Part shown: positions 22,491-36,782 of the stretch, piece by piece
Layout of the letters: each line of letters opens with the position of its first letter
Numbering within the stretch: the stretch's first letter is position 1
From: Styela clava
Taxonomy: Eukaryota
Direction: 5' to 3'
Assembly (NCBI RefSeq): GCF_964204865.1
Contig: NC_135257.1
Location: forward strand, 11,346,001 to 11,410,000
Length of the DNA: 64,000 bases
Translations under genes and position numbers: made by a program
The notes under the pieces: model-generated
Databases searched by the model: none
What the model was told of the DNA's origin: nothing
What the model saw: the letters and a program-made list of their open reading frames with translations, nothing else

Positions 22491-23777
22491 ATGGACTTGA
22501 AAGATTGTTTCTTACAATTTCCTGATGTGAAGCCTGTGGATCATGCTAAAAATTGTCCAAGATACACAAATATCGTTAATCGGCATAAAGATGATGGAGT
22601 ATCATTGGATGAATTAGATTCTTTACAAATGGAGTTGGAACAACTACTTGCCGCTGCATCACAAAGGATGAGACAATTGAACTCGGAGATTGGCATATTG
22701 TCAGACCTACAAGACAATAAAAAAGACAAAAAAGTTTCCAGAGGCAAAGATACTGAGCATAAGCGCTCTCGAATAGTTGAAGATCGTCCAGTCAAAAAGA
22801 TGAAAACATCAGACTCATCATCTCATATTCATGCTATAAAACCCTTATTTCATTTGAATAGTTCAACGTCATCACCAAGTGGTGCTGGCAGGTCGAAGGC
22901 AAAAGGCTCTCGCATTGAAACAGAAACAAATGACGAATTACCCGTTTTACAAAGGAATGCTGAAGTTCCTAATAAGTTTTGGCAAATGGTTGATACATAC
23001 TGTGGGCCCATACCACAAGAAACAATTTCGCTTTTAGAGAAAATGGAAAAACCAATTTCTGAGGAATATTTTGAAATTCCCCCTCTTGGCAAACATTTCA
23101 GTCAAGTTTGGGCAGAAGAAGATTTGGCAATGGAGGAAAAAGAAGGGGGTAGAATTGGAAAAAATAATAGTAATACTGAGTCATCTATTCAGAGGATAAT
23201 GAAAAAAACAGCAGAAAATTTGAATGATGCAGAACCATGCCCATATGGGTCACTTACCCAGCGATTGGTTTCTGCTTTCGTGCAAGAAAATATAATAGCG
23301 CCACTGGATTCTGGTCTTGCCAATGATGGAAAAGCATTTGAAGCTCTTACGAACAATGACCAAAATGTTGCTTCCAAAAATGGCAAGGCATCTAGTTCTC
23401 CCCATACCACAAAACTGGAGGCCCGAATAAAGGCTGAACTATATGAACAAGGTCTTATTGATCATTTTTCTGAAAATGATAAAGATGAAGATGAAGTTCT
23501 TTTGGAACTGAAACGATGTCAACAAGAATTGAGGGCAATAGGTGATAGAAATAGGACAATTGTTTCACAACTTTTGAAACTTTCCAGAGATGATATGAAA
23601 AAACAAGAATTGAGAAAAAATATTGAAATAACAAACATTGAAGTTACTGAACATTACAGAAAGGTTTTTGCTGCTCGACAGAAAAAAAGAAATTTGATGA
23701 AAAAGGAAAAAGAAAGTGCATTGAAAGCTATAAAAGAACGAGAAAGTTTGGTCAAACAGTTAGAACAATTGAACTGA
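22491..23777 (+). CDS. TADA3: Transcriptional adapter 3 (SAGA/ATAC HAT module subunit), single exon, 428 aa
   Basis: Motifs CPRYT..., SLDELDSLQMELEQLL, PNKFWQMVDTYC, IPPLGKHFSQVWAEEDL, CPYGSLTQRLVSAFVQENII match the recalled human TADA3. Confidence 0.95.
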   Translation: MDLKDCFLQFPDVKPVDHAKNCPRYTNIVNRHKDDGVSLDELDSLQMELEQLLAAASQRMRQLNSEIGILSDLQDNKKDKKVSRGKDTEHKRSRIVEDRPVKKMKTSDSSSHIHAIKPLFHLNSSTSSPSGAGRSKAKGSRIETETNDELPVLQRNAEVPNKFWQMVDTYCGPIPQETISLLEKMEKPISEEYFEIPPLGKHFSQVWAEEDLAMEEKEGGRIGKNNSNTESSIQRIMKKTAENLNDAEPCPYGSLTQRLVSAFVQENIIAPLDSGLANDGKAFEALTNNDQNVASKNGKASSSPHTTKLEARIKAELYEQGLIDHFSENDKDEDEVLLELKRCQQELRAIGDRNRTIVSQLLKLSRDDMKKQELRKNIEITNIEVTEHYRKVFAARQKKRNLMKKEKESALKAIKERESLVKQLEQLN

Positions 23778-24372
23778 TTTATATTCAACGCACAGTTACA
23801 GATTATAAGTTTGGTTTGAATCTAATTGGACTCGTGGTAAACATACCCATGCACACAACCTCTATCGTGTATGGGGATGTTGAAATATCAATACCGGTAA
23901 TTAGAATTCAATTAATCTAAATGGTCTATTTTTACAATAACGTGTTTCATATTTTAAACAATCATGACATTTCCCTGACAATGGTAAATTTTTTGAGTAA
24001 TCTTATATGCATTTTGTTTATCAAAACTAAACATACCATGGTCATTTTGAATAGATGCTGAGTAATTTGGTTTGTCAATTGTTCCTGCAATATCTTGTAT
24101 CACAACTTACGAGTTGTAGTTTAAAACCCTAATTTGAAAAGACATGAGAACTCATTAATATGATATTATGTGATGTGAGTATGTATTATTTTCTATTACT
24201 GTTGTTTCTCTATCTTTGCAAATTACACATTGTTGGAATTTTGAGAAAAATTGACTTTTTTTGGTAAAACAGAAACCTTTTTTTCTTTCCTAATGTTTAT
24301 TCGTTTATCTTTTTTATACAGCAGAAATTTTGGTAAAAGTTAAATTACATTCGTAACTCTAATTTTTCGACT

Positions 24373-27300
24373 ATGGACGAAATATTATTTCCGAGAGGAA
24401 AAGCAAAGCGTGAACCATCGACTTTTAAGAAGAAGGGTGCCAAACGCCAAGCCGCAGTTGATTCTCTGTTTTCAGAAGGAAGCAAGTCATCTACGGGTGG
24501 GCATTTTACAAAAGAAAAGAAAAAACCAAAAGAAAAAGATGAAATAATCAAAAGTCATGGTATTAAAGATGTGGATGGATTGTTACAAGGGATGGATGAA
24601 ATAAATGTGGATTTTTTGCATTGCAAAAGAGTACAAGAGGGAACACTGCTGTTGGGGTGTATTCGTGAGATACAGGAACTGCAACTTGTTGTTGGTATAC
24701 CTCATTGTAATACTGGTCAAGTACAAGCTAATCATATATCTGATATATATACTTCGCAAATACGAAAGCATCTTGAGCAAGATTCTGAGCAGCTTACGCC
24801 TTTATCTGATATGTTTCAAGTTGGGGATATTGTTGTTTGTTCTGTAGTTAATCCAACAGGGATTACGACACTACATCTCACTCTTCAACCATCTGTTGTA
24901 AATAAATATCTCTCCACAATGAGTTTTTTTGTTGGACAGATGATTTCTGGTGCTGTAAAATCAGAAGAAGACCATGGTTATACTATTGATATTGGAAAAA
25001 ATGATGTTAATGCATTTATACCGACTGGGGAAATTGGTGCTCGAAAATTGAAACTTGGTGCTGTCATTCGTTTTGTCATTACAAGTATTCGAGGAGAAGG
25101 AACTATTGTACTTTTGTCTTTAGATGAGAAAAAAATTGAAAAATCACTTTTAAAACTGGATAATGGAGTTTCGCTGGATACGCTGCAACCTGGAATGGTG
25201 GGAATGTTCCATCCAACAAAAAAACTAAAGCCTGGCGTAGTTGGAAAATTCTTGGATTTTAATGCTTCAGTTTGTGCTCTTGATTGTGATATGTCTAAAA
25301 TACGCTTAGAAAAGGATGACTTTGATAAAAATTTTGGGAAGAAGAAAAAACGCAAAACGACTAAAGGAAAGGATCAACCTGAAAAAGAGAGAATTGACAA
25401 ACGGATCAAAGGCTGTATTTTGTATGTGAACCCTATTACAAAACATGTTTCATTGAGTACCAATCACTTTTTGTTCACCAATGATACAAGACTGAAGATG
25501 ATAGAAACTAACATGAATCATTTTCCTCGGGGACACAAATGCTCAGCTAAGGTTACAAAGTGCATCAATGGATTGGGAGCTATGTTAATGATTGGAGAGT
25601 CAAATGGAACTCGCGCTTTTTGCCCTATGAAGTATGTAAGTGATGCGAAGATAACTAATTTTACAGAAGTAATCAGAAAAGGTGATTCTTTCCCAGCACT
25701 GGTTCTGCATAGTTCAAGTCTGGATGGTGCTGTTATTTTGAGTTTGAAGAAAAGTATGGTTGAACGTGAATTTTTAACCTATGACAGCATTACTCCTGGG
25801 ACAGTCATGGATTGTACTATTTCAGGTATTTTCGACAGTGGACTTGTTGTAACATTAGGTACAGATGCCTTTACTCCAGTAAAAGGCTTTGTGCCCAAAA
25901 TCCACATGGCTGACATTATTTTAAACCATCCTGAGAAAAAGTTTTCAAAAGGTGATGTAATATCATGCAAAGTTTTGTACGTCGATAAAGCTGCTGGACG
26001 AATACATCTGACTCACAAGAGAACTCTTTTGAAATCACGACTTCCTACTATCGTTAGTTATGATCAGTTAGAGCCTGGTTGCATTGCTCATGGTTACATT
26101 GCATCTATCAAACCATATGGGGTTTTTGTGAATTTTTATAACAATGTACATGGCATTGTGCGCAACTCTGAATTGTCTGCAGAATTGGTGGAAGATCCTG
26201 AAAAAATATTTTTTGTTGGACAGGTTATGAAGTGCCGGCTTTTGAGTTGTGATTTGGAAGCAGAACGTGCATCATTTTCATTTATTCTGAGACCTAAGCC
26301 AAAAGACAAAAAAGAAGATCATACATCCGTATCTAATATTAGCTTGGTGAATCTAGAGGTGGTGAATAAAATTGAAGGTGGCTTCGAAGTTGTTGTATGT
26401 GATGATGATAAGCAAAGGGACTTGTGGACCAAAGGATTTCTGCCCTTGATGCATTTGTCTGATTTTCCATCACTGGCACATTCATGGTATGAAATTATCA
26501 CTCCACATACTGTTTTAGAGGATTGTTTACCCATTGGTAAAAAGAAACAGCCCATCTTTACCAAGAAAAATTCTTTTGTAGGTAAATTCAAGAGCATGAA
26601 AGAGAACGCTGAAGATAATGCAAATCAAACGCTTACATTTTCTGACCTGAAAGAAGATTTGATAACACCTGGTTTTGTACATCATATCGCCGAGTATGGA
26701 GTGTTTGTTCAAGTTTACGGTGGTCTTTTAGGCTTGTGTCCAAAATCAAAGATGGCTGATCGCTACCTCCTTACATCTGATGGATATTACCAAGAAGGGC
26801 AGTCGGTGGTTGCTAAAATAGTTGAAATGGATATGGAAAAAAGAAGGTTTATTGTCAGTTTGAAAGTTTCTGATTGTCCACAAGAACAACTCACAGCGGA
26901 TTACTTGAAAGAGCTAACAGATATAATGCGAAGCTGTTCTTCTTCATGGCCAAAATCAGTGGCAATTGGTAAGCAAATGAAGGTACATTTGACTTCCAAA
27001 CCAAGCGAAAATGGTGTGGCAATGTGTAGCAGTTCACTTTTCCCTGAAAATTATAAGTGTTGTGTGATAGATATAGATACCAATGAAGAGTCAACAGATG
27101 TGAATGCAGCTCTACTTGATGTAAACCCTGTATCAAAATGTATAACATTGTCAGCTAATAGCAAATTACTTGGAAGTACAGTGAAGCATAATAATGGTAC
27201 TGTCTTGAAGGCAACAGTGGCATACATGAATGAAGATGTGTCGACTGTTTTCGATCTGGAGAACGCCTATGCTGGTTTACTTTTAAATAGAACCCATCCC

Positions 27301-29916
27301 AATCATCCCATATTCGAGAACTTGTGGCCTTGGAAGCAACATGACAGCATTACTGTTACAGTATGTAAACCAATAAATCAAGCGAATGTCGTTTCTGCTA
27401 CTCAAACTTCCCACAACAAAAAGCATTTTACTCATGGTGTAAAACGCCAAAGAGAAGAATCGGAATGCTCTGATGTGTCCTTGCAGGGTGATATAAATTT
27501 TGGAAACCTCCAAGTGGGTCAAAAAGTTGAAGGTACCATTCGCTCTGTACGAATGAATACTATTCTTGTCAGGTTTACGGAGTCTGAATTGGAAGGTGGT
27601 TACCGTGGACAACCAGTCACTGGAAGATTGCACATATCAGAGATAGAACATAAACATGAACATGGTGCTTTTTCGAAGATTACAAAATACCGCCCTTGGG
27701 ACAAATTAAAATGTAATGTAATAGGATTTCGTGATGTACGTACACACCGTTATCTTGCAATTACTAATCGAAATGCTAGGAGATGTGTTCCTGAGTTAAG
27801 TTTACTCGATTCTCCAGTTGGCATTGAATTTGAGGATTTGAAGATAGGTCAATGTATTACAGCTTTTTCTCATCAATATGTTCCTTCGAAAGATGAAATT
27901 CATGTTGAAATTACTCCTGCTATAAAAGGATTTCTACCTACCTTACTGCTTTCTGATAATCCAATGAAAATATTGAAATCTTCTCACAAATTCAAGAAGC
28001 CTGTTGTATTGCATTGTATCGTGCACAAACTGATGCACAATACTGTCACGCTCGCTGGAAAAGGTGCTATGATTGATAGAAAAACTCAGAAAGATGTTAC
28101 TGAACTGAATGAAGATTGCATCACAAATGGAAAGATTTGCAAAATTTTTCCAAGTAACATGATTATCAAATTACCTAAAGGTGGTGTTGGAAAAGTACAC
28201 ATCACACAATCTGCAGATGTGTTTGCTACTCGTCCATTTGAAGACTTCGAAGTTAGCCAGGTTGTTCGCTGTAGTATTGTGTCATGTGGAGATAGGAAAT
28301 CACTTGCCCTTTCTTTGAGGAAATCTAGACTCGCACAGGAGTATGACCAAAGTAATATAAAGGATAAAGAGATCTCGGAAGCCAAAGAAATACATTCTGG
28401 CCAAATACTTCGTGGTTTTGTAAAAATCGTCTCAAATTCTGGAGTTTTCGTTAGTTTGTCCCGGACCATCACTGGAAGAGTAGACATGACAAAGATTTCA
28501 AAATATTTCATAAAAGATACAAGTCTGATAGAAGAAGTGTTGAAAGAAGGGACTCTTGTTACATGTAAAGTAATTGAAGTGTCTAAAATGGAGGGAAAAG
28601 TTAGTTTGTCATTGTTAGAAGGGGATACTGGTTTGCCAGATCTTATTCCTGAAGCTCTTGGTCTTCCACAAAGACATGGTAAGCCAAAAGAGCAAAAAAG
28701 AAAAGAAGTTGGTCTGTTGGTTGACAAAATTGAGGGAAGGAAAAGGCGCAAAAAACAAAAAGAAGAAACTGGTGGCACTGAAGAGAAAAGAAAGAAGACT
28801 GATGACATTGATTCTGGACTTGAAGAGGAATCACCAACATTGGATACCCCACCTCGTTACCTAAGTAATGTTTCACAGCATGAAGATAGTGTTGAAGACC
28901 CAGGTTTTAGTTGGGAGTCAATAAATTCTACATCGGCAAAGGAAACAAGTGATTCTATGGATTCCTCAGATGATGACGATAATGCGGAATTGAGTGATGA
29001 AAAAGTTGTCAACAAGAAGAGCAAAAGAGAAATTGAAGCAGAAAAAGATCGTGAAGAAGCAGATCTGCGAACAAAAGAGGAGGAAATGTTAGAGGACAAT
29101 GCTCCACAGACAGCCTTGGATTGGGACAAGCTTGTACTTGCCAGTCCCCAGAATTCAATGCTATGGGTCAGCTACATGGCATTTCATCTTCGTGCCACTG
29201 AAGTTGAAAAGGCAAGAGTAGTTGCTGAAAGAGCATTAAAAGTGATTGATTTTCACGAAGAAAAAGAAAAGTGGAATGTATGGGCAGCTCTTCTTAACCT
29301 CGAAACTAGATTTGGTAGCAGTGAATCACTGACAAAAGTGATAGATACTGCGACCCAGCATAATGACCCTCTGAAAGTTAATTTTCATATGGTTTCTACC
29401 TTTGAAAGGTTGAACAAGTTTGATAATGCAGAAGAGTTGTGCTCAAAAATAGTAAGGAAATTCAAGCGCAATAAATCTGCCTGGATACTTTATATCAGCC
29501 ATCTTATGCAAAGAGGAAAGAGAGAAAAGGCAAATGAAGTTTTCAAAAGATGTTTACAGAGTCTTGAAAAGAATGTTCACCTTGAAATTATTTCAAAGTA
29601 TGCCCAATTGGAATATAAATGCGGAGACACTGAACAAGGCAGAGTTCTATTCGAAAATGCTCTCAGTAATTATCCGAAACGGGCTGATATTTGGTCTGTT
29701 TATATCGATATGTTGATAAAAGTGGACAAGTTGGAAGATGCAAGAGAAGTGTTTGAGCGTGTTACAACTCTAAATTTATCAACTAAAAATATGAGAAGTT
29801 TTTTCAAACGTTACATTGATTTTGAAACCAAATATGGGAGTGATGAATCTGTAGCTGAAGTAAAACAGAAGGCTCTTGACTATATTGAGTCGAAAACAAA
29901 TGATATGGTGGAATAA
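24373..29916 (+). CDS. PDCD11: RRP5 homologue (rRNA biogenesis; S1 repeats plus C-terminal HAT/TPR repeats), single exon, 1847 aa
   Basis: N-terminal FPRG; repeated S1 motifs (EEDHGYTIDIG, YGVFVNFY, YGVFVQVY, SGVFVSL); C-terminal PQNSMLWVSYMAFHL, EEKEKWNVWAALLNLE, YPKRADIWSVYIDM. Confidence 0.95.
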   Translation: MDEILFPRGKAKREPSTFKKKGAKRQAAVDSLFSEGSKSSTGGHFTKEKKKPKEKDEIIKSHGIKDVDGLLQGMDEINVDFLHCKRVQEGTLLLGCIREIQELQLVVGIPHCNTGQVQANHISDIYTSQIRKHLEQDSEQLTPLSDMFQVGDIVVCSVVNPTGITTLHLTLQPSVVNKYLSTMSFFVGQMISGAVKSEEDHGYTIDIGKNDVNAFIPTGEIGARKLKLGAVIRFVITSIRGEGTIVLLSLDEKKIEKSLLKLDNGVSLDTLQPGMVGMFHPTKKLKPGVVGKFLDFNASVCALDCDMSKIRLEKDDFDKNFGKKKKRKTTKGKDQPEKERIDKRIKGCILYVNPITKHVSLSTNHFLFTNDTRLKMIETNMNHFPRGHKCSAKVTKCINGLGAMLMIGESNGTRAFCPMKYVSDAKITNFTEVIRKGDSFPALVLHSSSLDGAVILSLKKSMVEREFLTYDSITPGTVMDCTISGIFDSGLVVTLGTDAFTPVKGFVPKIHMADIILNHPEKKFSKGDVISCKVLYVDKAAGRIHLTHKRTLLKSRLPTIVSYDQLEPGCIAHGYIASIKPYGVFVNFYNNVHGIVRNSELSAELVEDPEKIFFVGQVMKCRLLSCDLEAERASFSFILRPKPKDKKEDHTSVSNISLVNLEVVNKIEGGFEVVVCDDDKQRDLWTKGFLPLMHLSDFPSLAHSWYEIITPHTVLEDCLPIGKKKQPIFTKKNSFVGKFKSMKENAEDNANQTLTFSDLKEDLITPGFVHHIAEYGVFVQVYGGLLGLCPKSKMADRYLLTSDGYYQEGQSVVAKIVEMDMEKRRFIVSLKVSDCPQEQLTADYLKELTDIMRSCSSSWPKSVAIGKQMKVHLTSKPSENGVAMCSSSLFPENYKCCVIDIDTNEESTDVNAALLDVNPVSKCITLSANSKLLGSTVKHNNGTVLKATVAYMNEDVSTVFDLENAYAGLLLNRTHPNHPIFENLWPWKQHDSITVTVCKPINQANVVSATQTSHNKKHFTHGVKRQREESECSDVSLQGDINFGNLQVGQKVEGTIRSVRMNTILVRFTESELEGGYRGQPVTGRLHISEIEHKHEHGAFSKITKYRPWDKLKCNVIGFRDVRTHRYLAITNRNARRCVPELSLLDSPVGIEFEDLKIGQCITAFSHQYVPSKDEIHVEITPAIKGFLPTLLLSDNPMKILKSSHKFKKPVVLHCIVHKLMHNTVTLAGKGAMIDRKTQKDVTELNEDCITNGKICKIFPSNMIIKLPKGGVGKVHITQSADVFATRPFEDFEVSQVVRCSIVSCGDRKSLALSLRKSRLAQEYDQSNIKDKEISEAKEIHSGQILRGFVKIVSNSGVFVSLSRTITGRVDMTKISKYFIKDTSLIEEVLKEGTLVTCKVIEVSKMEGKVSLSLLEGDTGLPDLIPEALGLPQRHGKPKEQKRKEVGLLVDKIEGRKRRKKQKEETGGTEEKRKKTDDIDSGLEEESPTLDTPPRYLSNVSQHEDSVEDPGFSWESINSTSAKETSDSMDSSDDDDNAELSDEKVVNKKSKREIEAEKDREEADLRTKEEEMLEDNAPQTALDWDKLVLASPQNSMLWVSYMAFHLRATEVEKARVVAERALKVIDFHEEKEKWNVWAALLNLETRFGSSESLTKVIDTATQHNDPLKVNFHMVSTFERLNKFDNAEELCSKIVRKFKRNKSAWILYISHLMQRGKREKANEVFKRCLQSLEKNVHLEIISKYAQLEYKCGDTEQGRVLFENALSNYPKRADIWSVYIDMLIKVDKLEDAREVFERVTTLNLSTKNMRSFFKRYIDFETKYGSDESVAEVKQKALDYIESKTNDMVE

Positions 29917-30381
29917 GAAGGAAGGACCAATAAAACGTACAATGCATGATGAATTTTAAATAGAAAATGGATTAGTAATTCTGTATCATTCAATCTGCAT
30001 AGTCGAACAGTATCACCTGTTTCTTATGGTCATTCATTTCATTGTTCTTTTGAAGTTTATCAATCAGTGAAATGGATGGATATTATTTTGCATTGAATAA
30101 CCTATTCTGTTTCTGCTCTCACTACTATTGCTGCATTGCCAGTGATTGTTATATTAATGCGACTGTCTGTCAGTTTATGCAAAATCACTCATTTGATCTG
30201 TAATGTGTTAAGTATGTGTTAAAATTTTTTTGCCTAATTATGGGTTTAAAATCGATCATTTTTCATGTATCTGTTCTTTATCATGCTATGTATCTTTATT
30301 TCAATCTCAAACTGCCAATCACGTTTTTTTCTGTTTTCCAGATCTTATAATAGATTTTATTCATGGTTTTTGTGCTTAGAA

Positions 30382-30615
30382 ATGGATAATCGTGGTGGAG
30401 GAAGCGTTATACAAAGAGAGATTCAACAAGATTGGGCAAATCGGGAATATATTGAAGTAATAACAAGCAGCATAAGAAAAATTGCAGACTTTCTCAACGG
30501 ATTCGATCTGTCTTGTCGTTCACGTCTTGCAACACTGAATGAAAAATTAACAAAACTTGAAAAGCGCATAGAATACATTGAAGCTAGAGTTACGAGGGGG
30601 GAAACTCTCAGCTGA
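30382..30615 (+). CDS. BRK1: BRICK1 / HSPC300 (WAVE regulatory complex subunit), single exon, 77 aa
   Basis: [67 protein letters not shown] is near-identical to the recalled human BRK1; ATG at 30382 follows TGCTTAG|AA. Confidence 0.95.
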
Positions 30616-30650
30616 ATTCTTGAATTGCACAAAACTTAACTTTATAAACT

Positions 30651-33600
30651 ATGTCTGATCCACTTTCTTTTTTTGCTGCTAATTCTGATGATTCCGATTC
30701 TGAAGATGATAATTCTGATAAGGAGGATGCTAGCATACCTGTTACTAAGCCTGCTCAACAAACAGTCAAACCAGGCAACAAAAAATTGCCACCACCTATG
30801 ACAGTACTTGCATCAGCTAAACGGCCAGAGTTTACAATAGACCCACTTCGCCAGGATGTGGACTGGGACAAACTGACAAAGAAAGCACCTGAACTGGTAA
30901 ATCATTTTCATATGTTTGTAAAAATATACCTTACCAGTCTACGGAATGTTCAGAGGCATTGTCTCTTACTTAGGACTTGATACAATGTTTAAATATAAGT
31001 TTCTGACCTATTACTGCTGCCGTTATTTTGTGTAGTGAGGATCTAAGTTACATTATTACTAGTGTAAGTAAGCCTAATTTATAGATATTATGAACTAATG
31101 AGTTGACGACCATCTTCCATTATTTCTCAAATTGTTCAGTACATGATGTTTTGTTTATAGTCAAATATCACATCCTCACTCGTAACACTACATGCACAAT
31201 ATATCTTCAACACAGTATAAATTTGTTGCTGCGACTAGGGTTGCCACTTCCGGATACATTTTTTTTCGAATCGAATCTCGAATCGAAAATTTTCGAATCG
31301 AATCTTTCCGAATCTGGTTCCGGAAATGTTTTTTTTTTTTTTTTTTCATCGCTAAAAAATTACCCAAACTGCGTCACCTCTAATGCTGACATGGCACCCA
31401 AACAATACACTATTACAGCAAAAACAAAACGCCAGTGGAAAATGAAATATAATCTGTTATCTGAAAACAAATTCCAAAATAACATGCAAAACATCACCCC
31501 CCCCCTGTCAGAACCTGTGTGTCAAGTTCGCGAAAAAGGCAAAATTTGAAGAAGATATTGTTTCACTCCAACAATTTCTTATTGCAGTAGAGAAAATTGA
31601 GTTCATTAACATGGGCACTCGTTAGTCGTGATCTCAACTGTGAAACAGTCAGTCCAGCAGAAGAAAAAGCCCTTTCTGAAGCAGCCGAGGTTGCGGGTAC
31701 ACTCAGATACTTCACTGCCATTCTCTTGAGCAAAGGGGCACGGGCTCCATTGTTATCCCACCAGGTCAATGGTGCAGGTGGTGACTCTTTATCATCAACC
31801 TTTCGTTTTAAGTACCAAGCTATTTCCTCTGACACAATATTTGAACTTTCCGAGTCTGAAGAACTGCCAGAGTTCTCTAGGCCTCTCTCAAAAAGTCCAT
31901 GAATTTCACTAGATGAATTCACGGTTTCCATTTGCTCTTGACTATGATCCATTTGTGGCAGGGGTCCATGACGTGATTCATCCTGAGCCGTAGAAGTATC
32001 TGCTTCAGTTTCAACAGCTATCCGCACCTATGAAAAATGTTTCATCAGCATCAGAAATCGAAGTGAGATTAATTTGAAATTAGAACATTCAAAAATTAAA
32101 TTACCGAGACTCGCATCTGTCTGCTGAAAAATTTGCCCTTGTGAAAGGGATTCAACCAGGTGGACTTGTGGTAAATGCTTACTCCTTCGCTTTGTACTGA
32201 AGTTGACATGACATCTGAGAATCTAGTGTGTAACGAACTGAGAATGGTCGAACAGAAGGTCTTTGATGCCGATAGCTGAAGATCATCGACAAGGAGTTCT
32301 TCACACTGACCCACTAAACCTTTTGCAATTGGTAGCAAAGATGACATCGTCACATAATTACTTCCTTCAAGGTGATCAGAGGCTGTCTAAAAATAAGATA
32401 TTTTATTGCAAATTTTTGAACACTGAATTGTAAACCCAAGGACAAATAATCCTAGTCAATATAATTCAGTTCTCATAAACTATCATTATGATGCAGCAAA
32501 CACAGAGTTAGTAACCTTTTGAAATAAAATTCTGAGCTTGATTAGTTACCTTGAATGGTTTCAATATGATAGAAATTTCTCTCAGCAAGCTCCAGTGGTT
32601 GTCCTTTAGTTCAAGACTGACTGCTGTCGCTCGTGGGACAATTGTTGGATCAGCCAGTACCGAACGAATTATCCACTGGTTTTTCACAAGATTTGCTATC
32701 ATAGCAAATGTGGAGTTCCACCTGGTTGAAACGTCTATCGGCATCTCAATGTTTTTTATTTCAGTGTCTGCCGACTGAGCATGGCGTCGCAACGCTGTCA
32801 TGCATTTTGCTGACCTTCTAAAGTGTTGCACTAAGTGCCGCGCAGCACCTGAAATTTAAATTTTTATACATAAATACATCCAGTGAACATATTCTGACAA
32901 AAAGTGTTTCATTTAAATAGCATATGATTTCAAACTATCCATTTGTAGGCATTCCATAGATTTATCAGGCTTTCCCCTTATTTAGCATCACATACAGCCT
33001 CACTTACCTAGTGCCCTTGCTATTTCTGTATTTTTGATGGCATCTTTGATACACAGCTGGAGGGTGTGAGCAGCGCAACGAATGTGATGCCAGCCATGTT
33101 CAGTTTGTAAAATTTTACATGCAGAAACAACATTCGCCCCATTGTCTGTTACTATAGCAAATATGGAGGAAGGGGGGATAGAAAAATCATTCAGTACATA
33201 TAGGATGTAACTTTTCAAGTTTATACCAGTTTGGTCCCCAACTATTTGTGTAGTGGACAATACATAGTTCTGTAGTTCTCCTGCCATGACAAAATGTGCT
33301 GTAACAGTTATATAAGCTTCCATCCGGATGCTTGTCCATGCATCTGTTGTGATAGATATCACATTTTGTTCTTTTAAAATAGACATGAGTTTGCATTTAT
33401 ACTGCGAATATGTAGTTTCAATCTGTTTTCCAAAAAAAGTTCTTCCAGGCATCTCGTATCCCGGCTCAAGATTTGATATTAAATTTCTAAAATGCTCCCC
33501 CTCTACGATATTGATCGGCCTCATGTCCCCTATTATAACATTGACTATTAATTTGTCTATATGATTCTGTCTTTGTCTGCTAATGGACTTTGATTTAAAA

Positions 33601-36600
33601 AAGGTTTCAAGTTTTTTCTGTTTTGTTCCACTTCCACTGCCTTCTGTCACTTGGCTCGCTGTTAAACTGAAAATAAAATGTATAAAATATAAACAGCAGC
33701 TACATAATCTTGTACACATTTAGTAAAATTTTCTGCTGGCTTGACCTGCTTTATTGATTAGACAGTATGAAATATGGTGGACAATTGCCTCTGACATAAA
33801 TTTGCCTGACCTGGCTGGGCATCACAACTGTCAACATCGCAACTAATACAATTCTAACTTTTGTATCAGCTTGAAGTTACACGAGTATAAAATTATTTCT
33901 AATTACTGATTTCTCTATTTATCTTTTCAGTCCTGCCAGTATGTTAGTTTAGCAAACCATTGCTTATTTCATTTCCTAAATGAAACTGTTTTAAGTACCC
34001 GAGTTTAAGAACTATAATTCTGTAGTTACGTAAGCCCATATGGCGTTCTGGCTGTAGAAGAATTAATTAAAAAAAAGGTTTGGCTTACTTTGATGTATGC
34101 ACTGAATCAGTGTTGATGAATGCATGTCTTCTTCTGAGGTGGTTCAAAAGATTGCCGGTAGACTCGCAGTATGACAACTTCTCTTTACAGAAGTTGCAAA
34201 TCACATATGAATATCCCTCCTCTTTTGACGGGCGAGAAAAATGTTCCCAGACTAAGGAATTGGGGCGCTGTCCCTGCCGCCTAGGTGTTATTTTTTTAAA
34301 GCTACTACTGATATTAGACATTCTGAATAATAAAAATGCATTGCAAATAGTCATATAATTAAGTTATACTAGTAAGCTACCGATGCCTGGCCGCACATTT
34401 TGCAGTCCAATGAGTTTAACAGCAGCGCATGGCACCCTGTCAAGTACCACGTCCCGGTTCTCCTACAATTTGCAATGCAAACTTGTAACAATCAGTCCCC
34501 ACTCAGTCTTGAACCACTGAATTGTTGAACCCAACACCGCAGAAGAACACTGAAAAAACTTGTTGTAATATTCCGCTTGACAACACGACAGAACAATACG
34601 GCAATAACACTCGCAAATGGCACACAGAGTTTGTAGACTACCCCACGCTGAGTTTTACTGTTACCGGTAACAAATATTGATAGATTCCAGGATTAAATAA
34701 CTAAATACAGAACAGTTAGTAAATATAACACGCAATAAGTCCCATCCTATCCTAACCTATTGATTCCCAACTAAATAATAACAATAGCAGAAATCTAATA
34801 ACTCACAAAACGCACACTCAACTAAATCCTAAAGGACCGGCAAAGCAGATGACTGCCGATTGCGCCATCACAGCTCGTCTCGCTCACGCACAACAGAGAG
34901 CAATACAAGATACTAACTAAAGAGCAAGGGTCGACGTCGGTCGATTGCAGCAGCCAATAGCGTGCAAGACAAACATATTGCGACATCGCTCAATACTCAC
35001 TCTCAAATACAATAAAGAAATAAACCAATGTTCAGACCTGTTGAAAATTGTTGTCGTAAAATTACGCATCAAAGAAGCCCGGGCGATATGTGAATTCGAC
35101 TTTGCGAACGAGCAAAGAGTTTTGCAGACCACTAGCAGATGTCTCGCTGGTGTGTGTTCCCCACTGCAAAACGAACGCAAAACGAGAGCACTTCGCCGAA
35201 AAAAAGAAGGCAAATCACTCTCTAAAGTATATCTTTCGTCGTTGAAATGAATGCTAATTTCATCAAACAAAGAACTGTATCCCATTATAAAGCGCAAATT
35301 CATTCGAGAGAGATAGCCGGACGAGCGCTTATTTGTTTGCTTTCGAGTGAAATCATATCTGGAAGACAACCGCCGTTAATAAAATCGAGAGTCGGCGTTA
35401 TTTTTTGTAAAGCCACGTTATCGTTTTTCGAATCGCCCGAGTGCGATTCGAATCGATTCGAAAAGGCAACGATTCGAATCGATTCGATTCGGAAATCCAA
35501 ATGTGGCATCCCTAGCTGCGACCAAGTGAATTTTATTTTCATACGATAAATTAACATATAAAAGCATTCATATCATTATGGAATGACAAGTTGGATTTGG
35601 TCAACCATATTGCCATTTTTGATTTTTCAACAAATCTCTGTATCAGGACGTAAGTTTATTTGTTACAGTTTGCAAATGCAATGTATAATATATTTTTCGT
35701 TCTTAGCCTGAAAAAGAATACAAGCCTTGGGAAAACAGACTTCCTACAGTTGAAAAATCTGTGAAGACCAAAGATGGAACAAAGCAATCAACTTTAGCAC
35801 AACAAGTACCTGGAGCTTCTGCTCCTAATGTTGCAGATGGTATGTAACTTTATTTATCTTACCATGAAAGCTTTTACCTCTTTAAAATATTAGAAGACAT
35901 TTGAGTGAATTGGAAATGATGTAATGCTCTTCACTTTTTTATACTTTGCGCCATTGCCAATTGAAAGCATTTGCAAGAGTTTCAAAGGTAACTGTTATAA
36001 CTCTTGACTCCTTAAGCATCTCGTTTTTCACTTTCAATGAACATACCTGAAGCAAGCCCGTATCATAAATGAAATAAATAGTAATATTTCATTATGTTTG
36101 ATTGAAATTACATTTTATAGGTCCAGCTCAAGGTCGCCCACATGAATACATTGATCAGGCAGTTCAGTGGTCTAAAATGTATCAAACAATGGATAAATCA
36201 GGAAATATCAAAAGGGTGAAACCACAGGATATAGGTGGAGAAGATTTAGAAGGATTTCTCTTTACTGATCTGGAGGCAGAAAAGGTGAATACTGCAGAGC
36301 TAATGAATTTCAACTTTGAATTCATACATTTTGCTCTGATCGAGGCTCTGTACAGGCAGCCACTTTTTTTAAAAAGATCCAAAACTTCCTGAACCTGCGA
36401 TGCCATATTAGTTAAGTCTAATGTAACCACTAGGCCAATAGCCCACAAAATTACTCTCTATTTGTAAAATAATGTTTGAAAAAATCAAAATTTAATGTGA
36501 CTACTATTCATTAGGTCGCATATAACGGTAACAAACGGCAGAAAATGGATCAACAACAGCCACCCTCTTTCCGATCCAAGGAAGCAAAAAAGAGAACTAT

Positions 36601-36679
36601 GGGAATGGCTAACAGAGACAAAATGTTTGTTGAAGAAGAGAAAAGGCTCTTAAGGCAGGAATTCGATGCCAATTACTGA
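30651..36679 (+). CDS. C1orf52: UPF0690 / C1orf52 homologue, 4 exons, 235 aa
   Basis: In-phase GT-AG exons 30651-30896, 35707-35839, 36121-36284, 36515-36679. Motifs DPLSFFAA, KKLPPP, RPEF..DPL.Q.VDW....KAPE.PEKEYKPW, IDQAVQWSKMY. AATAAA at 36777. Confidence 0.85.
31236..35514 (-). mobile_element. Full-length hAT DNA transposon (4279 bp) in intron 1 of C1orf52
   Basis: Perfect TSD GCTGCGAC (31228-31235, 35515-35522); TIRs TAGGGTTGCCAC / GTGGCATCCCTA; subterminal TTCGAATCGA arrays; transposase inside. Confidence 0.95.
31563..34321 (-). CDS. hAT transposase (ZBED1/Ac-like): BED finger, DDE core, dimerisation domain; 5 coding exons, 645 aa
   Basis: Exons 34321-34089, 33666-33008, 32848-32550, 32386-32105, 32027-31563 splice in frame with no stops. 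Motifs: BED VWEHF..C..C...TGNLLNHLRRRH, TTDAWTS, VTDNGAN, CAAH, TRWNST, WW, SAASERAFSSAG. Confidence 0.9.
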
Positions 36680-36776: not shown

Positions 36777-36782
36777 AATAAA
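36777..36782 (+). terminator. Polyadenylation signal at the end of the TADA3-C1orf52 cluster
   Basis: AATAAA about 100 nt after the C1orf52 stop. Confidence 0.6.

What the first reader, a model, noticed from the sequence alone, without database searches (positions are those of the whole stretch)
30382..30896. BRK1 and C1orf52 separated by 35 nt with no splice acceptor or canonical poly(A) signal: candidate true bicistronic mRNA
Seen: the BRK1 stop ends at 30615 and the C1orf52 ATG is at 30651. The conserved DPLSFFAA N-terminus fixes that start. The spacer ATTCTTGAATTGCACAAAACTTAACTTTATAAACT has no AG and no AATAAA (only TATAAA), and the two ORFs are out of frame. The nearest upstream AG is CTCTCAG (30610-30611), inside the last BRK1 sense codon. 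Known: tunicate operons are resolved by SL trans-splicing at an AG between cistrons. Inference: either both proteins come from one mRNA by re-initiation or leaky scanning, or alternative acceptors (30341/30379 versus 30611) select which ORF is read. Cutting at 30611 would leave the upstream BRK1 RNA without a stop codon. A full-length BRK1 mRNA would carry downstream exon junctions and look like an NMD substrate.
Basis: partly seen in the sequence, partly recalled or inferred. Interest (0 to 1): 0.85.

Follow-up and report, generated by a model that had tools for sequence, protein, structure and literature searches.

The report
Sea-squirt BRK1–C1orf52 two-gene transcript unit
In the sea squirt Styela clava the small actin-regulator gene BRK1 ends only 35 bases before the start of C1orf52, with no usable splice site between them. 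Related species keep the two genes together on the same contigs, two of them spliced RNA contigs, so the pair is a good natural test of how tunicate "operons" are split or translated, although I could obtain no sequencing reads to settle the mechanism.

Summary
BRK1 (30382-30615, 77 aa, intronless) is followed by a 35-nt spacer with no AG and no AATAAA. C1orf52 exon 1 (30651-30896) comes next. My four-exon model of C1orf52 is 100% identical to the Styela clava RefSeq protein XP_039271545.2, so the genome and the start codon are fixed.

New evidence is indirect. In three related species the BRK1 and C1orf52 proteins share the same contig counts and longest-contig lengths (2265, 2955, 3583 nt). 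Two of these pairs carry the fully spliced C1orf52, so they are RNA contigs that very probably hold both ORFs. The exact BRK1 protein is not in the protein collection that holds the S. clava RefSeq C1orf52.

The pair is therefore very probably one conserved transcription unit of the ascidian operon type (single-exon 5' gene). The canonical Ciona junction, with poly(A) added at the acceptor G, cannot work here because it would give BRK1 no stop codon.

The route to C1orf52 protein stays open. I put SL trans-splicing at CTCTCAG (30611), exclusive with BRK1, at about 0.45. True bicistronic translation is about 0.3. An internal start site is about 0.1.

The parts
29929..29934 (+). AATAAA of the upstream RRP5/PDCD11 gene (stop at 29914-29916). 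It marks an ordinary 3' end about 405 nt before the BRK1 acceptor.
   Evidence: Read; RRP5 domains.
30318..30341 (+). Strong acceptor-like site (T-rich tract then CAG, ending at 30341). It is the likely SL trans-splice or first acceptor of the unit.
   Evidence: 17 of 20 pyrimidines upstream, the best of all sites scored.
30363..30389 (+). 8-codon upstream ORF (ATG at 30363, TAA at 30387-30389). It overlaps the BRK1 ATG out of frame and is present only if acceptor 30341 is used.
   Evidence: codons read.
30378..30379 (+). Second acceptor-like AG (GTGCTTAG), 2 nt before the BRK1 ATG.
   Evidence: 14 of 20 pyrimidines upstream.
30382..30615 (+). BRK1 / BRICK1 coding sequence: single exon, 77 aa plus TGA.
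   Evidence: E 5e-36 to human BRICK1 (3p8c_E) over its full length; 99% identical to P0003 of a sister species.
30592..30612 (+). Last seven BRK1 codons (ACG AGG GGG GAA ACT CTC AGC), with atypical synonymous codon choice. They contain CTCTCAG, the only AG from which a leader free of ATG runs to the C1orf52 start.
   Evidence: 0.2% tail of 7-codon windows in the neighbouring genes; P 0.018 on resampling the same peptide. An adjacent pyrimidine run of 5 or more occurs at 2.4% of coding AGs.
30616..30650 (+). 35-nt spacer without AG and without ATG. TATAAA lies at 30643-30648 and TAA at 30645-30647, in frame with the next ATG.
30651..30896 (+). C1orf52 (UPF0690, DUF4660) exon 1, 82 codons, with a GT donor at 30897.
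   Evidence: Pfam PF15559 8e-10; identical to XP_039271545.2.
30897..35706 (+). Intron 1 (4.8 kb), holding a hAT-like transposon on the minus strand.
   Evidence: boundaries checked.
35707..35839 (+). C1orf52 exon 2.
36121..36284 (+). C1orf52 exon 3.
36515..36679 (+). C1orf52 exon 4 with stop TGA at 36677-36679. AATAAA follows at 36777-36782.

Best explanation
BRK1 and C1orf52 form one conserved transcription unit of the ascidian operon type in Styela clava: a single-exon 5' gene followed by a four-exon gene.

Proposed sequence of events:
1. The primary transcript starts in the roughly 400 nt after the RRP5 poly(A) signal.
2. It receives the spliced leader at the strong acceptor at 30341, or at 30379.
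3. Its three introns are removed and it is polyadenylated after AATAAA at 36777.

There is no AG and no canonical poly(A) signal between the two ORFs. The usual Ciona resolution, in which the upstream mRNA ends at the G of the downstream acceptor, is therefore impossible without destroying the BRK1 stop codon.

I think the spliced two-ORF RNA itself serves as the BRK1 mRNA. A share of the precursors is instead trans-spliced at CTCTCAG (30611). That gives a C1orf52 mRNA with a 39-nt leader free of ATG, at the price of the BRK1 reading frame. Each RNA molecule therefore yields one protein or the other.

Shown: the anatomy, the conservation of the linkage, and (indirectly) RNA contigs that join both ORFs.
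Inferred: the acceptor actually used, the 3' end of BRK1 mRNA, and the split of fates.
For: Anatomy and gene identity:
- Anatomy was read and recomputed.
- BRK1 is full length.
- The C1orf52 model equals RefSeq XP_039271545.2.

Linkage in relatives, inferred from equal contig numbers and lengths:
- P0003 (BRK1, 99% identical) and P0160 (spliced 235-aa C1orf52, 86% identical) both sit on 2 contigs, longest 2265 nt.
- P0004 (BRK1) and P0161 (spliced 227-aa C1orf52) both sit on 2 contigs, longest 2955 nt.
- P0005 (BRK1) and P0002 (exon 1 read into the intron) both sit on 1 contig of 3583 nt.

Agreement with what is known of Ciona:
- Single-exon genes make up 60% of the 5'-most operon genes (PMC2760879).
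- Operon upstream genes usually lack AATAAA, and all sampled downstream genes are SL trans-spliced (PMC1488885).
- Mutually exclusive processing was already proposed there.

The 30611 site:
- CTCTC directly before an AG is seen at only 2.4% of coding AGs.
- It is built from rare codons. The last 7 codons fall in the 0.2% tail, and resampling gives P 0.018.
- No ATG lies between 30542 and 30651.
Against:
- The shared-contig inference rests on equal contig counts and lengths, not on the contigs themselves.
- An assembler would also merge overlapping single-gene mRNAs.
- Over 20 nt, the AG at 30611 has only 8 pyrimidines (4 T). That is ordinary for coding AGs, against 11-17 at the real acceptors of this locus.
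- The G-rich stretch before it is not a pyrimidine tract.
- I could not find the species' SL RNA gene.
Confidence: 0.45

Rival explanations
1. True bicistronic mRNA. No trans-splicing occurs inside the unit, and both proteins are made from the one spliced mRNA. C1orf52 is reached in one of three ways:
- leaky scanning past the BRK1 AUG, which would be favoured if the leader is only SL plus 2 nt after splicing at 30379;
- translation of the 8-codon uORF (30363-30389), which carries ribosomes past the BRK1 AUG and lets them re-initiate further on;
- re-initiation after BRK1 itself.
For: - No AG lies in the spacer, and nothing like a real pyrimidine tract precedes 30611.
- Only one ATG lies between the two starts (30539). 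It has a weak context and a 3-codon ORF.
- The C1orf52 AUG has A at -3.
- RNA around the spacer and the leader is less structured than shuffles (z +1.5 and +1.4), which suits scanning.
- Spliced RNA contigs of two relatives appear to hold both ORFs.
- The exact BRK1 protein is absent from the collection that holds the S. clava RefSeq C1orf52. That would fit BRK1 lying in the 5' UTR of the C1orf52 model, though I did not see the annotation itself.
Against: - The BRK1 AUG has a strong context (G at -3, G at +4).
- Re-initiation after 77 codons is usually poor (general knowledge).
- ATG depletion is not significant: 1 observed against 1.9 expected, P 0.33.
- All sampled downstream genes of Ciona operons are SL trans-spliced.
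- The BRK1 stop lies 281 nt before an exon junction, which would mark the mRNA for NMD if tunicates use the junction rule (inference).
Confidence: 0.3
2. Overlapping single-gene mRNAs. BRK1 has its own 3' end, driven by the weak signal TATAAA (30643-30648). Cleavage would fall near the CA at 30661-30662, before the U-rich run that encodes LSFF. C1orf52 mRNA would start at 30612 by trans-splicing. The two mRNAs would overlap by about 50 nt. This variant differs from the best explanation only in the BRK1 3' end.
For: - TATAAA is the only poly(A)-like hexamer between the BRK1 stop and the end of exon 1 apart from AATAGA and AAGAAA, which lie far downstream.
- The hexamer, a CA and a U-rich run downstream are spaced as in a textbook site.
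- Ciona operon upstream genes usually lack AATAAA.
- Such overlapping mRNAs would also assemble into one contig.
Against: - The U-rich run is simply the codons of the conserved peptide PLSFFAA.
- No poly(A) reads were available.
- In Ciona the poly(A) site lies at or 2-6 nt before the acceptor G, not after it.
Confidence: 0.2
3. Independent downstream promoter. C1orf52 mRNA starts with a cap at a transcription start inside the last 50-90 nt of BRK1 or in the spacer. The closeness of the two genes is then only compaction.
For: The leader from any point after 30542 is free of ATG. Compact genomes do hold overlapping transcription units (general knowledge).
Against: - TATAAA at 30643 lies too close to the ATG to act as a TATA box for this start. 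The start site would fall after the ATG (inference).
- The linkage is kept in relatives whose C1orf52 exon 1 is only about 50% identical.
- Tight same-strand pairs in Ciona are trans-spliced operons in all sampled cases.
Confidence: 0.1

Closest known systems
Ciona intestinalis operons without intercistronic DNA (Satou et al. 2006, PMC1488885; Satou et al. 2008, PMC2760879)
   Same: Both are same-strand pairs less than 100 nt apart. The 5'-most gene is single-exon. The upstream gene has no AATAAA. Unresolved dicistronic RNAs exist. Processing was proposed to be mutually exclusive.
   Different: In Ciona the upstream mRNA ends exactly at the G of the downstream acceptor, which lies after the upstream stop codon. 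Here no AG lies after the stop. The only candidate AG sits in the last sense codon of BRK1, so the abutting rule would give a BRK1 mRNA without a stop.
Caenorhabditis elegans SL1-type operons (as cited in PMC1488885, its refs 42-43)
   Same: There is no intercistronic space. Formation of the upstream 3' end and downstream trans-splicing compete for the same RNA.
   Different: Those operons carry a canonical AAUAAA in the upstream gene, and the acceptor lies after the stop codon. Neither holds here.
Animal bicistronic mRNAs read by leaky scanning or re-initiation, e.g. MOCS2A/B, SNURF-SNRPN (from my own knowledge)
   Same: Two conserved, unrelated ORFs lie on one spliced mRNA, with a short spacer and few AUGs between the starts.
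   Different: The upstream AUG here has a strong context, and the first ORF is 77 codons long. Translation of the second ORF is not shown, and the host has SL trans-splicing as an alternative route.
NUDCD2/KDM8 overlap in the same genome
   Same: It is in the same species. The downstream cistron must begin inside or right at the end of the upstream coding sequence, and the upstream gene is intronless.
   Different: There the ORFs overlap by about 40 nt; here they are 35 nt apart. I did not re-test that locus.

Membership tests
BRK1 / BRICK1 (HSPC300) subunit of the WAVE complex | Full-length similarity to BRICK1, about 75 aa, coiled coil | tested here: met
   E 5e-36 to 3p8c_E over residues 8-76 of the query and 6-74 of 75; 298 homologues at E <= 1e-10.
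C1orf52 / UPF0690 (Pfam DUF4660) | DUF4660 domain and the conserved N-terminal DPLSFFA motif | tested here: met
   PF15559 at 8e-10, above the cut-off; 100% identity to XP_039271545.2; motif present in tunicate, amphioxus and vertebrate hits.
Ciona-type SL-resolved operon | Same-strand genes less than 100 nt apart | tested here: met
   35 nt between the stop codon and the ATG.
Ciona-type SL-resolved operon | An acceptor AG after the upstream stop codon, at which the upstream mRNA ends and the downstream mRNA begins (abutting cistrons) | tested here: not met
   No AG lies in 30616-30650. The nearest is at 30610-11, before the stop codon. The rule is described in PMC1488885.
Ciona-type SL-resolved operon | The downstream mRNA carries the spliced leader | not testable with these tools
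Ciona-type SL-resolved operon | The host has SL RNA genes and SL trans-splicing | tested here: inconclusive
   The Ciona 16-mer plus GT is not multi-copy in this genome; the one array found is tRNA-gene upstream sequence. A donor plus Sm-site pattern was not enriched. Earlier notes of this scan report SL genes in this genome; I did not check them.
Ciona-type SL-resolved operon | Single-exon 5'-most gene, and no AATAAA in the upstream cistron | tested here: met
   BRK1 is intronless. No AATAAA or ATTAAA lies in 30560-31100. The trait is described.
True bicistronic mRNA (leaky scanning or re-initiation) | Both ORFs on one mature, spliced, polyadenylated mRNA | tested here: inconclusive
   This rests on indirect evidence only: equal contig counts and lengths for BRK1 and spliced C1orf52 in two relatives. 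An assembler could merge overlapping mRNAs.
True bicistronic mRNA (leaky scanning or re-initiation) | Weak first AUG and lack of AUGs between the two starts | tested here: inconclusive
   The first AUG has a strong context (G at -3, G at +4). One intervening ATG has a 3-codon ORF. The depletion is not significant, P 0.33.
C. elegans SL1-type operon | Canonical AAUAAA in the upstream gene, next to the trans-splice site | tested here: not met
   Only TATAAA at 30643-48 is present.

The most novel reading that the evidence does not exclude
Styelid sea squirts keep a class of operon pairs that are never resolved. A spliced, SL-capped mRNA carries two unrelated conserved ORFs (BRK1, then C1orf52). 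The ribosome reaches the second one by a built-in bypass, either a short uORF overlapping the BRK1 AUG or a very short leader. On this reading tunicate operons include true chordate bicistronic mRNAs.
Probability: 0.3. Interest if true: 0.75.

Novelty: new variant of a known kind. Interest (0 to 1): 0.5.

Why it matters
How Ciona-type operons without intercistronic DNA are resolved has been open since 2006. The question is whether trans-splicing itself makes the upstream 3' end, and whether each transcript can give only one of the two mRNAs.

At this locus the sequence alone excludes the abutting solution, because it would strip BRK1 of its stop codon. Whatever happens here must be one of three things:
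- a processing choice that sacrifices one message;
- overlapping messages;
- translation of two ORFs from one mRNA.

The pair is short, conserved across several styelid species, and made of two well-recognisable proteins. A few long reads, SL-anchored 5' ends and one reporter construct would therefore decide the matter. With the NUDCD2/KDM8 case noted earlier in the same genome, it suggests a class of such junctions rather than a one-off.

Tried and rejected
No run ids were available, so read laying could not be used.
The Logan contigs that hold P0002/P0005, P0003/P0160 and P0004/P0161 could not be read.

Searches that led nowhere:
- The metagenome scan with BRK1 gave four contigs, none with C1orf52 downstream. 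L010 has a tunicate-like BRK1 but no C1orf52 within 1.5 kb, so the linkage is probably not shared by all tunicates.
- The hunt for the SL RNA gene failed. The Ciona SL plus GT is not multi-copy here. The C3 array that matched is upstream sequence of tRNA genes. A donor plus Sm-site pattern was not enriched, and the two small repeats I inspected do not look like SL genes.
- No paper links BRK1 with C1orf52 or describes Styela operons.

Tests that gave no signal:
- ATG depletion in BRK1 as a sign of leaky scanning is not significant.
- An IRES-like or re-initiation structure is not supported, because the RNA is less structured than shuffles.
- The second BRK1-like copy (C18) has an intron and is a diverged paralogue, not a retrocopy, so it is no fossil of the mRNA ends.

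Readings I rejected:
- A four-gene operon TADA3-RRP5-BRK1-C1orf52 looks unlikely. RRP5 has AATAAA 13 nt after its stop, and about 405 nt lie before the next acceptor. About 540 nt lie between the TADA3 stop and the RRP5 acceptor.
- A frameshift or read-through fusion of the two ORFs is excluded by TAA at 30645-47 in the C1orf52 frame.

Handling of the joined model: the joined four-exon C1orf52 model was not sent to any search tool. Searches used exon 1 by reference or database proteins. The joined translation was computed only in a local script, to check the frame and to compare it with P0159.
Full report
**What is there**

The window is Styela clava. My four-exon model of the downstream gene covers 30651-30896, 35707-35839, 36121-36284 and 36515-36679 (235 aa). 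It is 235/235 identical to RefSeq XP_039271545.2, "UPF0690 protein C1orf52 homolog [Styela clava]". An earlier follow-up of this scan names the same species.

The upstream ORF, 30382-30615, is a full-length BRK1/BRICK1. It matches the human protein in the WAVE complex structure at E 5e-36, aligned to residue 74 of 75, so its stop codon is where it should be.

Between the two lie 35 nt (30616-30650) with these features:
- no AG;
- no ATG;
- no AATAAA or ATTAAA;
- one TATAAA, at 30643-48.

The C1orf52 ATG is preceded by an in-frame TAA at 30645-47. It is followed at once by the motif DPLSFFA, which tunicate, amphioxus and vertebrate homologues all carry at their N-terminus. The nearest upstream AG is at 30610-11 in CTCTCAG, inside the last BRK1 codon.

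A 35-nt stretch without AG is not rare in this DNA (P 0.16-0.26). Its weight is mechanistic, not statistical.

**Surroundings**

All genes upstream on the same strand are intronless:
- TADA3 (22492-23778);
- RRP5/PDCD11 (24373-29916, 1847 aa);
- BRK1.

RRP5 has AATAAA 13 nt after its stop codon. About 405 nt follow before a strong acceptor-like site that ends at 30341 (17 of 20 pyrimidines). A second such site lies at 30379. In Ciona the median outron is about 458 nt (PMC11155486). I therefore read BRK1 as the first gene of a two-gene unit, not as the third gene of a four-gene operon.

C1orf52 intron 1 (4.8 kb) holds a hAT-like element on the minus strand.

**Evidence from relatives**

The protein collections still give indirect evidence, because BRK1 homologues and C1orf52 homologues share contig statistics.

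| BRK1 homologue | C1orf52 homologue | Contigs | Longest contig |
|---|---|---|---|
| P0003 (99% identical) | P0160 (235 aa, fully spliced, 86% identical to my model) | 2 each | 2265 nt |
| P0004 (87%) | P0161 (227 aa, spliced) | 2 each | 2955 nt |
| P0005 (86%) | P0002 (exon 1 running into the intron) | 1 each | 3583 nt |

Three exact coincidences of this kind cannot be chance. A contig of 2-3 kb that encodes the complete C1orf52 must be spliced RNA, because the introns add 5.3 kb in S. clava, and relatives show the same exon-1 boundary.

Two conclusions follow. The linkage is conserved among relatives whose C1orf52 exon 1 is only about 50% identical. In two species, RNA assemblies run from BRK1 into spliced C1orf52.

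There is a caveat. I did not see the contigs, and an assembler would also join overlapping single-gene mRNAs.

One more hint: the exact BRK1 protein is absent from the collection that does hold the S. clava RefSeq C1orf52. That is what one would expect if the annotation put BRK1 into the 5' UTR of the C1orf52 model, but I did not see the annotation itself.

One metagenome contig (L010) has a tunicate-like BRK1 and no C1orf52 within 1.5 kb downstream. The linkage is therefore probably limited to part of the tunicates.

**Comparison with what is known**

Ciona operons are same-strand pairs less than 100 nt apart:
- 60% have a single-exon 5' gene (PMC2760879).
- The upstream gene usually lacks AATAAA.
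- The upstream mRNA ends exactly at the G of the AG to which the spliced leader is joined (PMC1488885).
- All sampled downstream genes are trans-spliced, and unresolved dicistronic cDNAs exist but are rare.
- The authors already argued that each transcript may give only one of the two mRNAs.

The Styela pair fits this picture in every respect but one: there is no AG after the BRK1 stop. If the Ciona rule were applied at 30611, BRK1 mRNA would read CTC AGA AAA and so on, without a stop codon. The locus therefore cannot use the canonical junction.

**Is 30611 an acceptor?**

The evidence is mixed.

Against:
- Over 20 nt upstream it has 8 pyrimidines (4 T). This is as ordinary as the AGs inside the RRP5 and TADA3 coding sequences, 62% of which score at least as high.
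- The six real or likely acceptors of the locus have 11-17 pyrimidines.

For:
- The five pyrimidines directly before it (CTCTC) are seen at only 11 of 460 coding AGs (2.4%).
- They are built from rare codons (CTC 8% of Leu, AGC 11% of Ser).
- The last seven BRK1 codons are the most atypical synonymous choice in the gene. They fall in the 0.2% tail of 7-codon windows of the neighbouring genes.
- Resampling the same peptide gives P 0.018, and the result is stable for window sizes of 3-12 codons.

This suggests some nucleotide-level constraint on 30592-30612, but it does not prove an acceptor.

**Signs of translation of both ORFs from one mRNA**

- Only one ATG lies between the two starts (30539, weak context, 3-codon ORF). 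This is not fewer than expected, however: 1.9 on synonymous resampling, P 0.33.
- The BRK1 AUG has G at -3 and G at +4, which does not favour leaky scanning.
- If the acceptor at 30341 is used, the leader holds an 8-codon uORF (30363-30389) that overlaps the BRK1 AUG. Ribosomes that read it would pass BRK1 and could re-initiate downstream.
- If 30379 is used, the leader is only the SL plus 2 nt, which could make the first AUG leaky. Both of these ideas are inferences.
- The RNA around the spacer and around the leader folds less well than shuffles (z +1.5 and +1.4). There is therefore no sign of an IRES-like structure and nothing to hinder scanning.

**Verdict**

I am fairly sure (about 0.85) that BRK1 and C1orf52 are one conserved transcription unit of the ascidian operon type, and that RNA spanning both ORFs exists.

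For the route to C1orf52 protein I commit, at about 0.45, to a choice of fates:
- The spliced two-ORF RNA is the BRK1 mRNA.
- A share of the precursors is trans-spliced at 30611 to give the C1orf52 mRNA, destroying the BRK1 frame.

The alternatives are:
- true bicistronic translation, about 0.3;
- an internal capped start, about 0.1;
- a variant in which BRK1 is polyadenylated behind TATAAA, so that the two mRNAs overlap by about 50 nt.

This is a new variant of a known kind. It is not yet a demonstrated bicistronic mRNA, but it is a clean test locus. An earlier follow-up in the same genome (NUDCD2/KDM8) describes a sister case, so the scan has seen this type before on other DNA of this genome.

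**Limits**

- No reads and no contigs of relatives could be inspected.
- The species' spliced leader was not identified.
- The joined C1orf52 model was not sent to any search tool. It was used only in a local script for frame and identity checks.

Noticed in passing
window 22492-29916: TADA3 (about 428 aa) and RRP5/PDCD11 (1847 aa) are each a single uninterrupted ORF on the same strand as BRK1. An intronless 5.5-kb RRP5 is striking for a gene that has many introns in vertebrates.
   Followed up: partly
G000:C18:822113-822295 (L015 1501-1690): A second, diverged BRK1-like gene (59% identical, ends KKAT-stop) with an intron acceptor just before the codons for EDWDNREY. The conserved operon copy is intronless, while the diverged copy keeps an intron.
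   Followed up: partly
window 31228-35522: A hAT-like transposon on the minus strand inside C1orf52 intron 1. It has a C-terminal dimerisation-like ORF at 31563-32027, and CGAATCGAATC-type repeats near both ends (31270-31310 and 35420-35490).
   Followed up: no
G000:C3:24847000-24962000 (L009): A tandem array of more than 100 kb of tRNA genes. A conserved upstream motif, ATTCTATTTGCATAAG, differs from the Ciona spliced leader by one base. This is a trap for anyone searching for SL genes by pattern.
   Followed up: partly
window 30616-30627: The spacer begins ATTCTTGAATTG, which loosely recalls the Ciona spliced leader ATTCTATTTGAATAAG (10 of 16 bases with a 3-base gap). This is probably chance. 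It could not be judged without the Styela SL.
   Followed up: no
L010 1216-1225: In a metagenome contig with a tunicate-like intronless BRK1, the stop codon is TAG followed by CTGA. The string AGCTGA is thus shared with Styela but shifted by one base relative to the frame. There the stop codon itself offers an AG.
   Followed up: no
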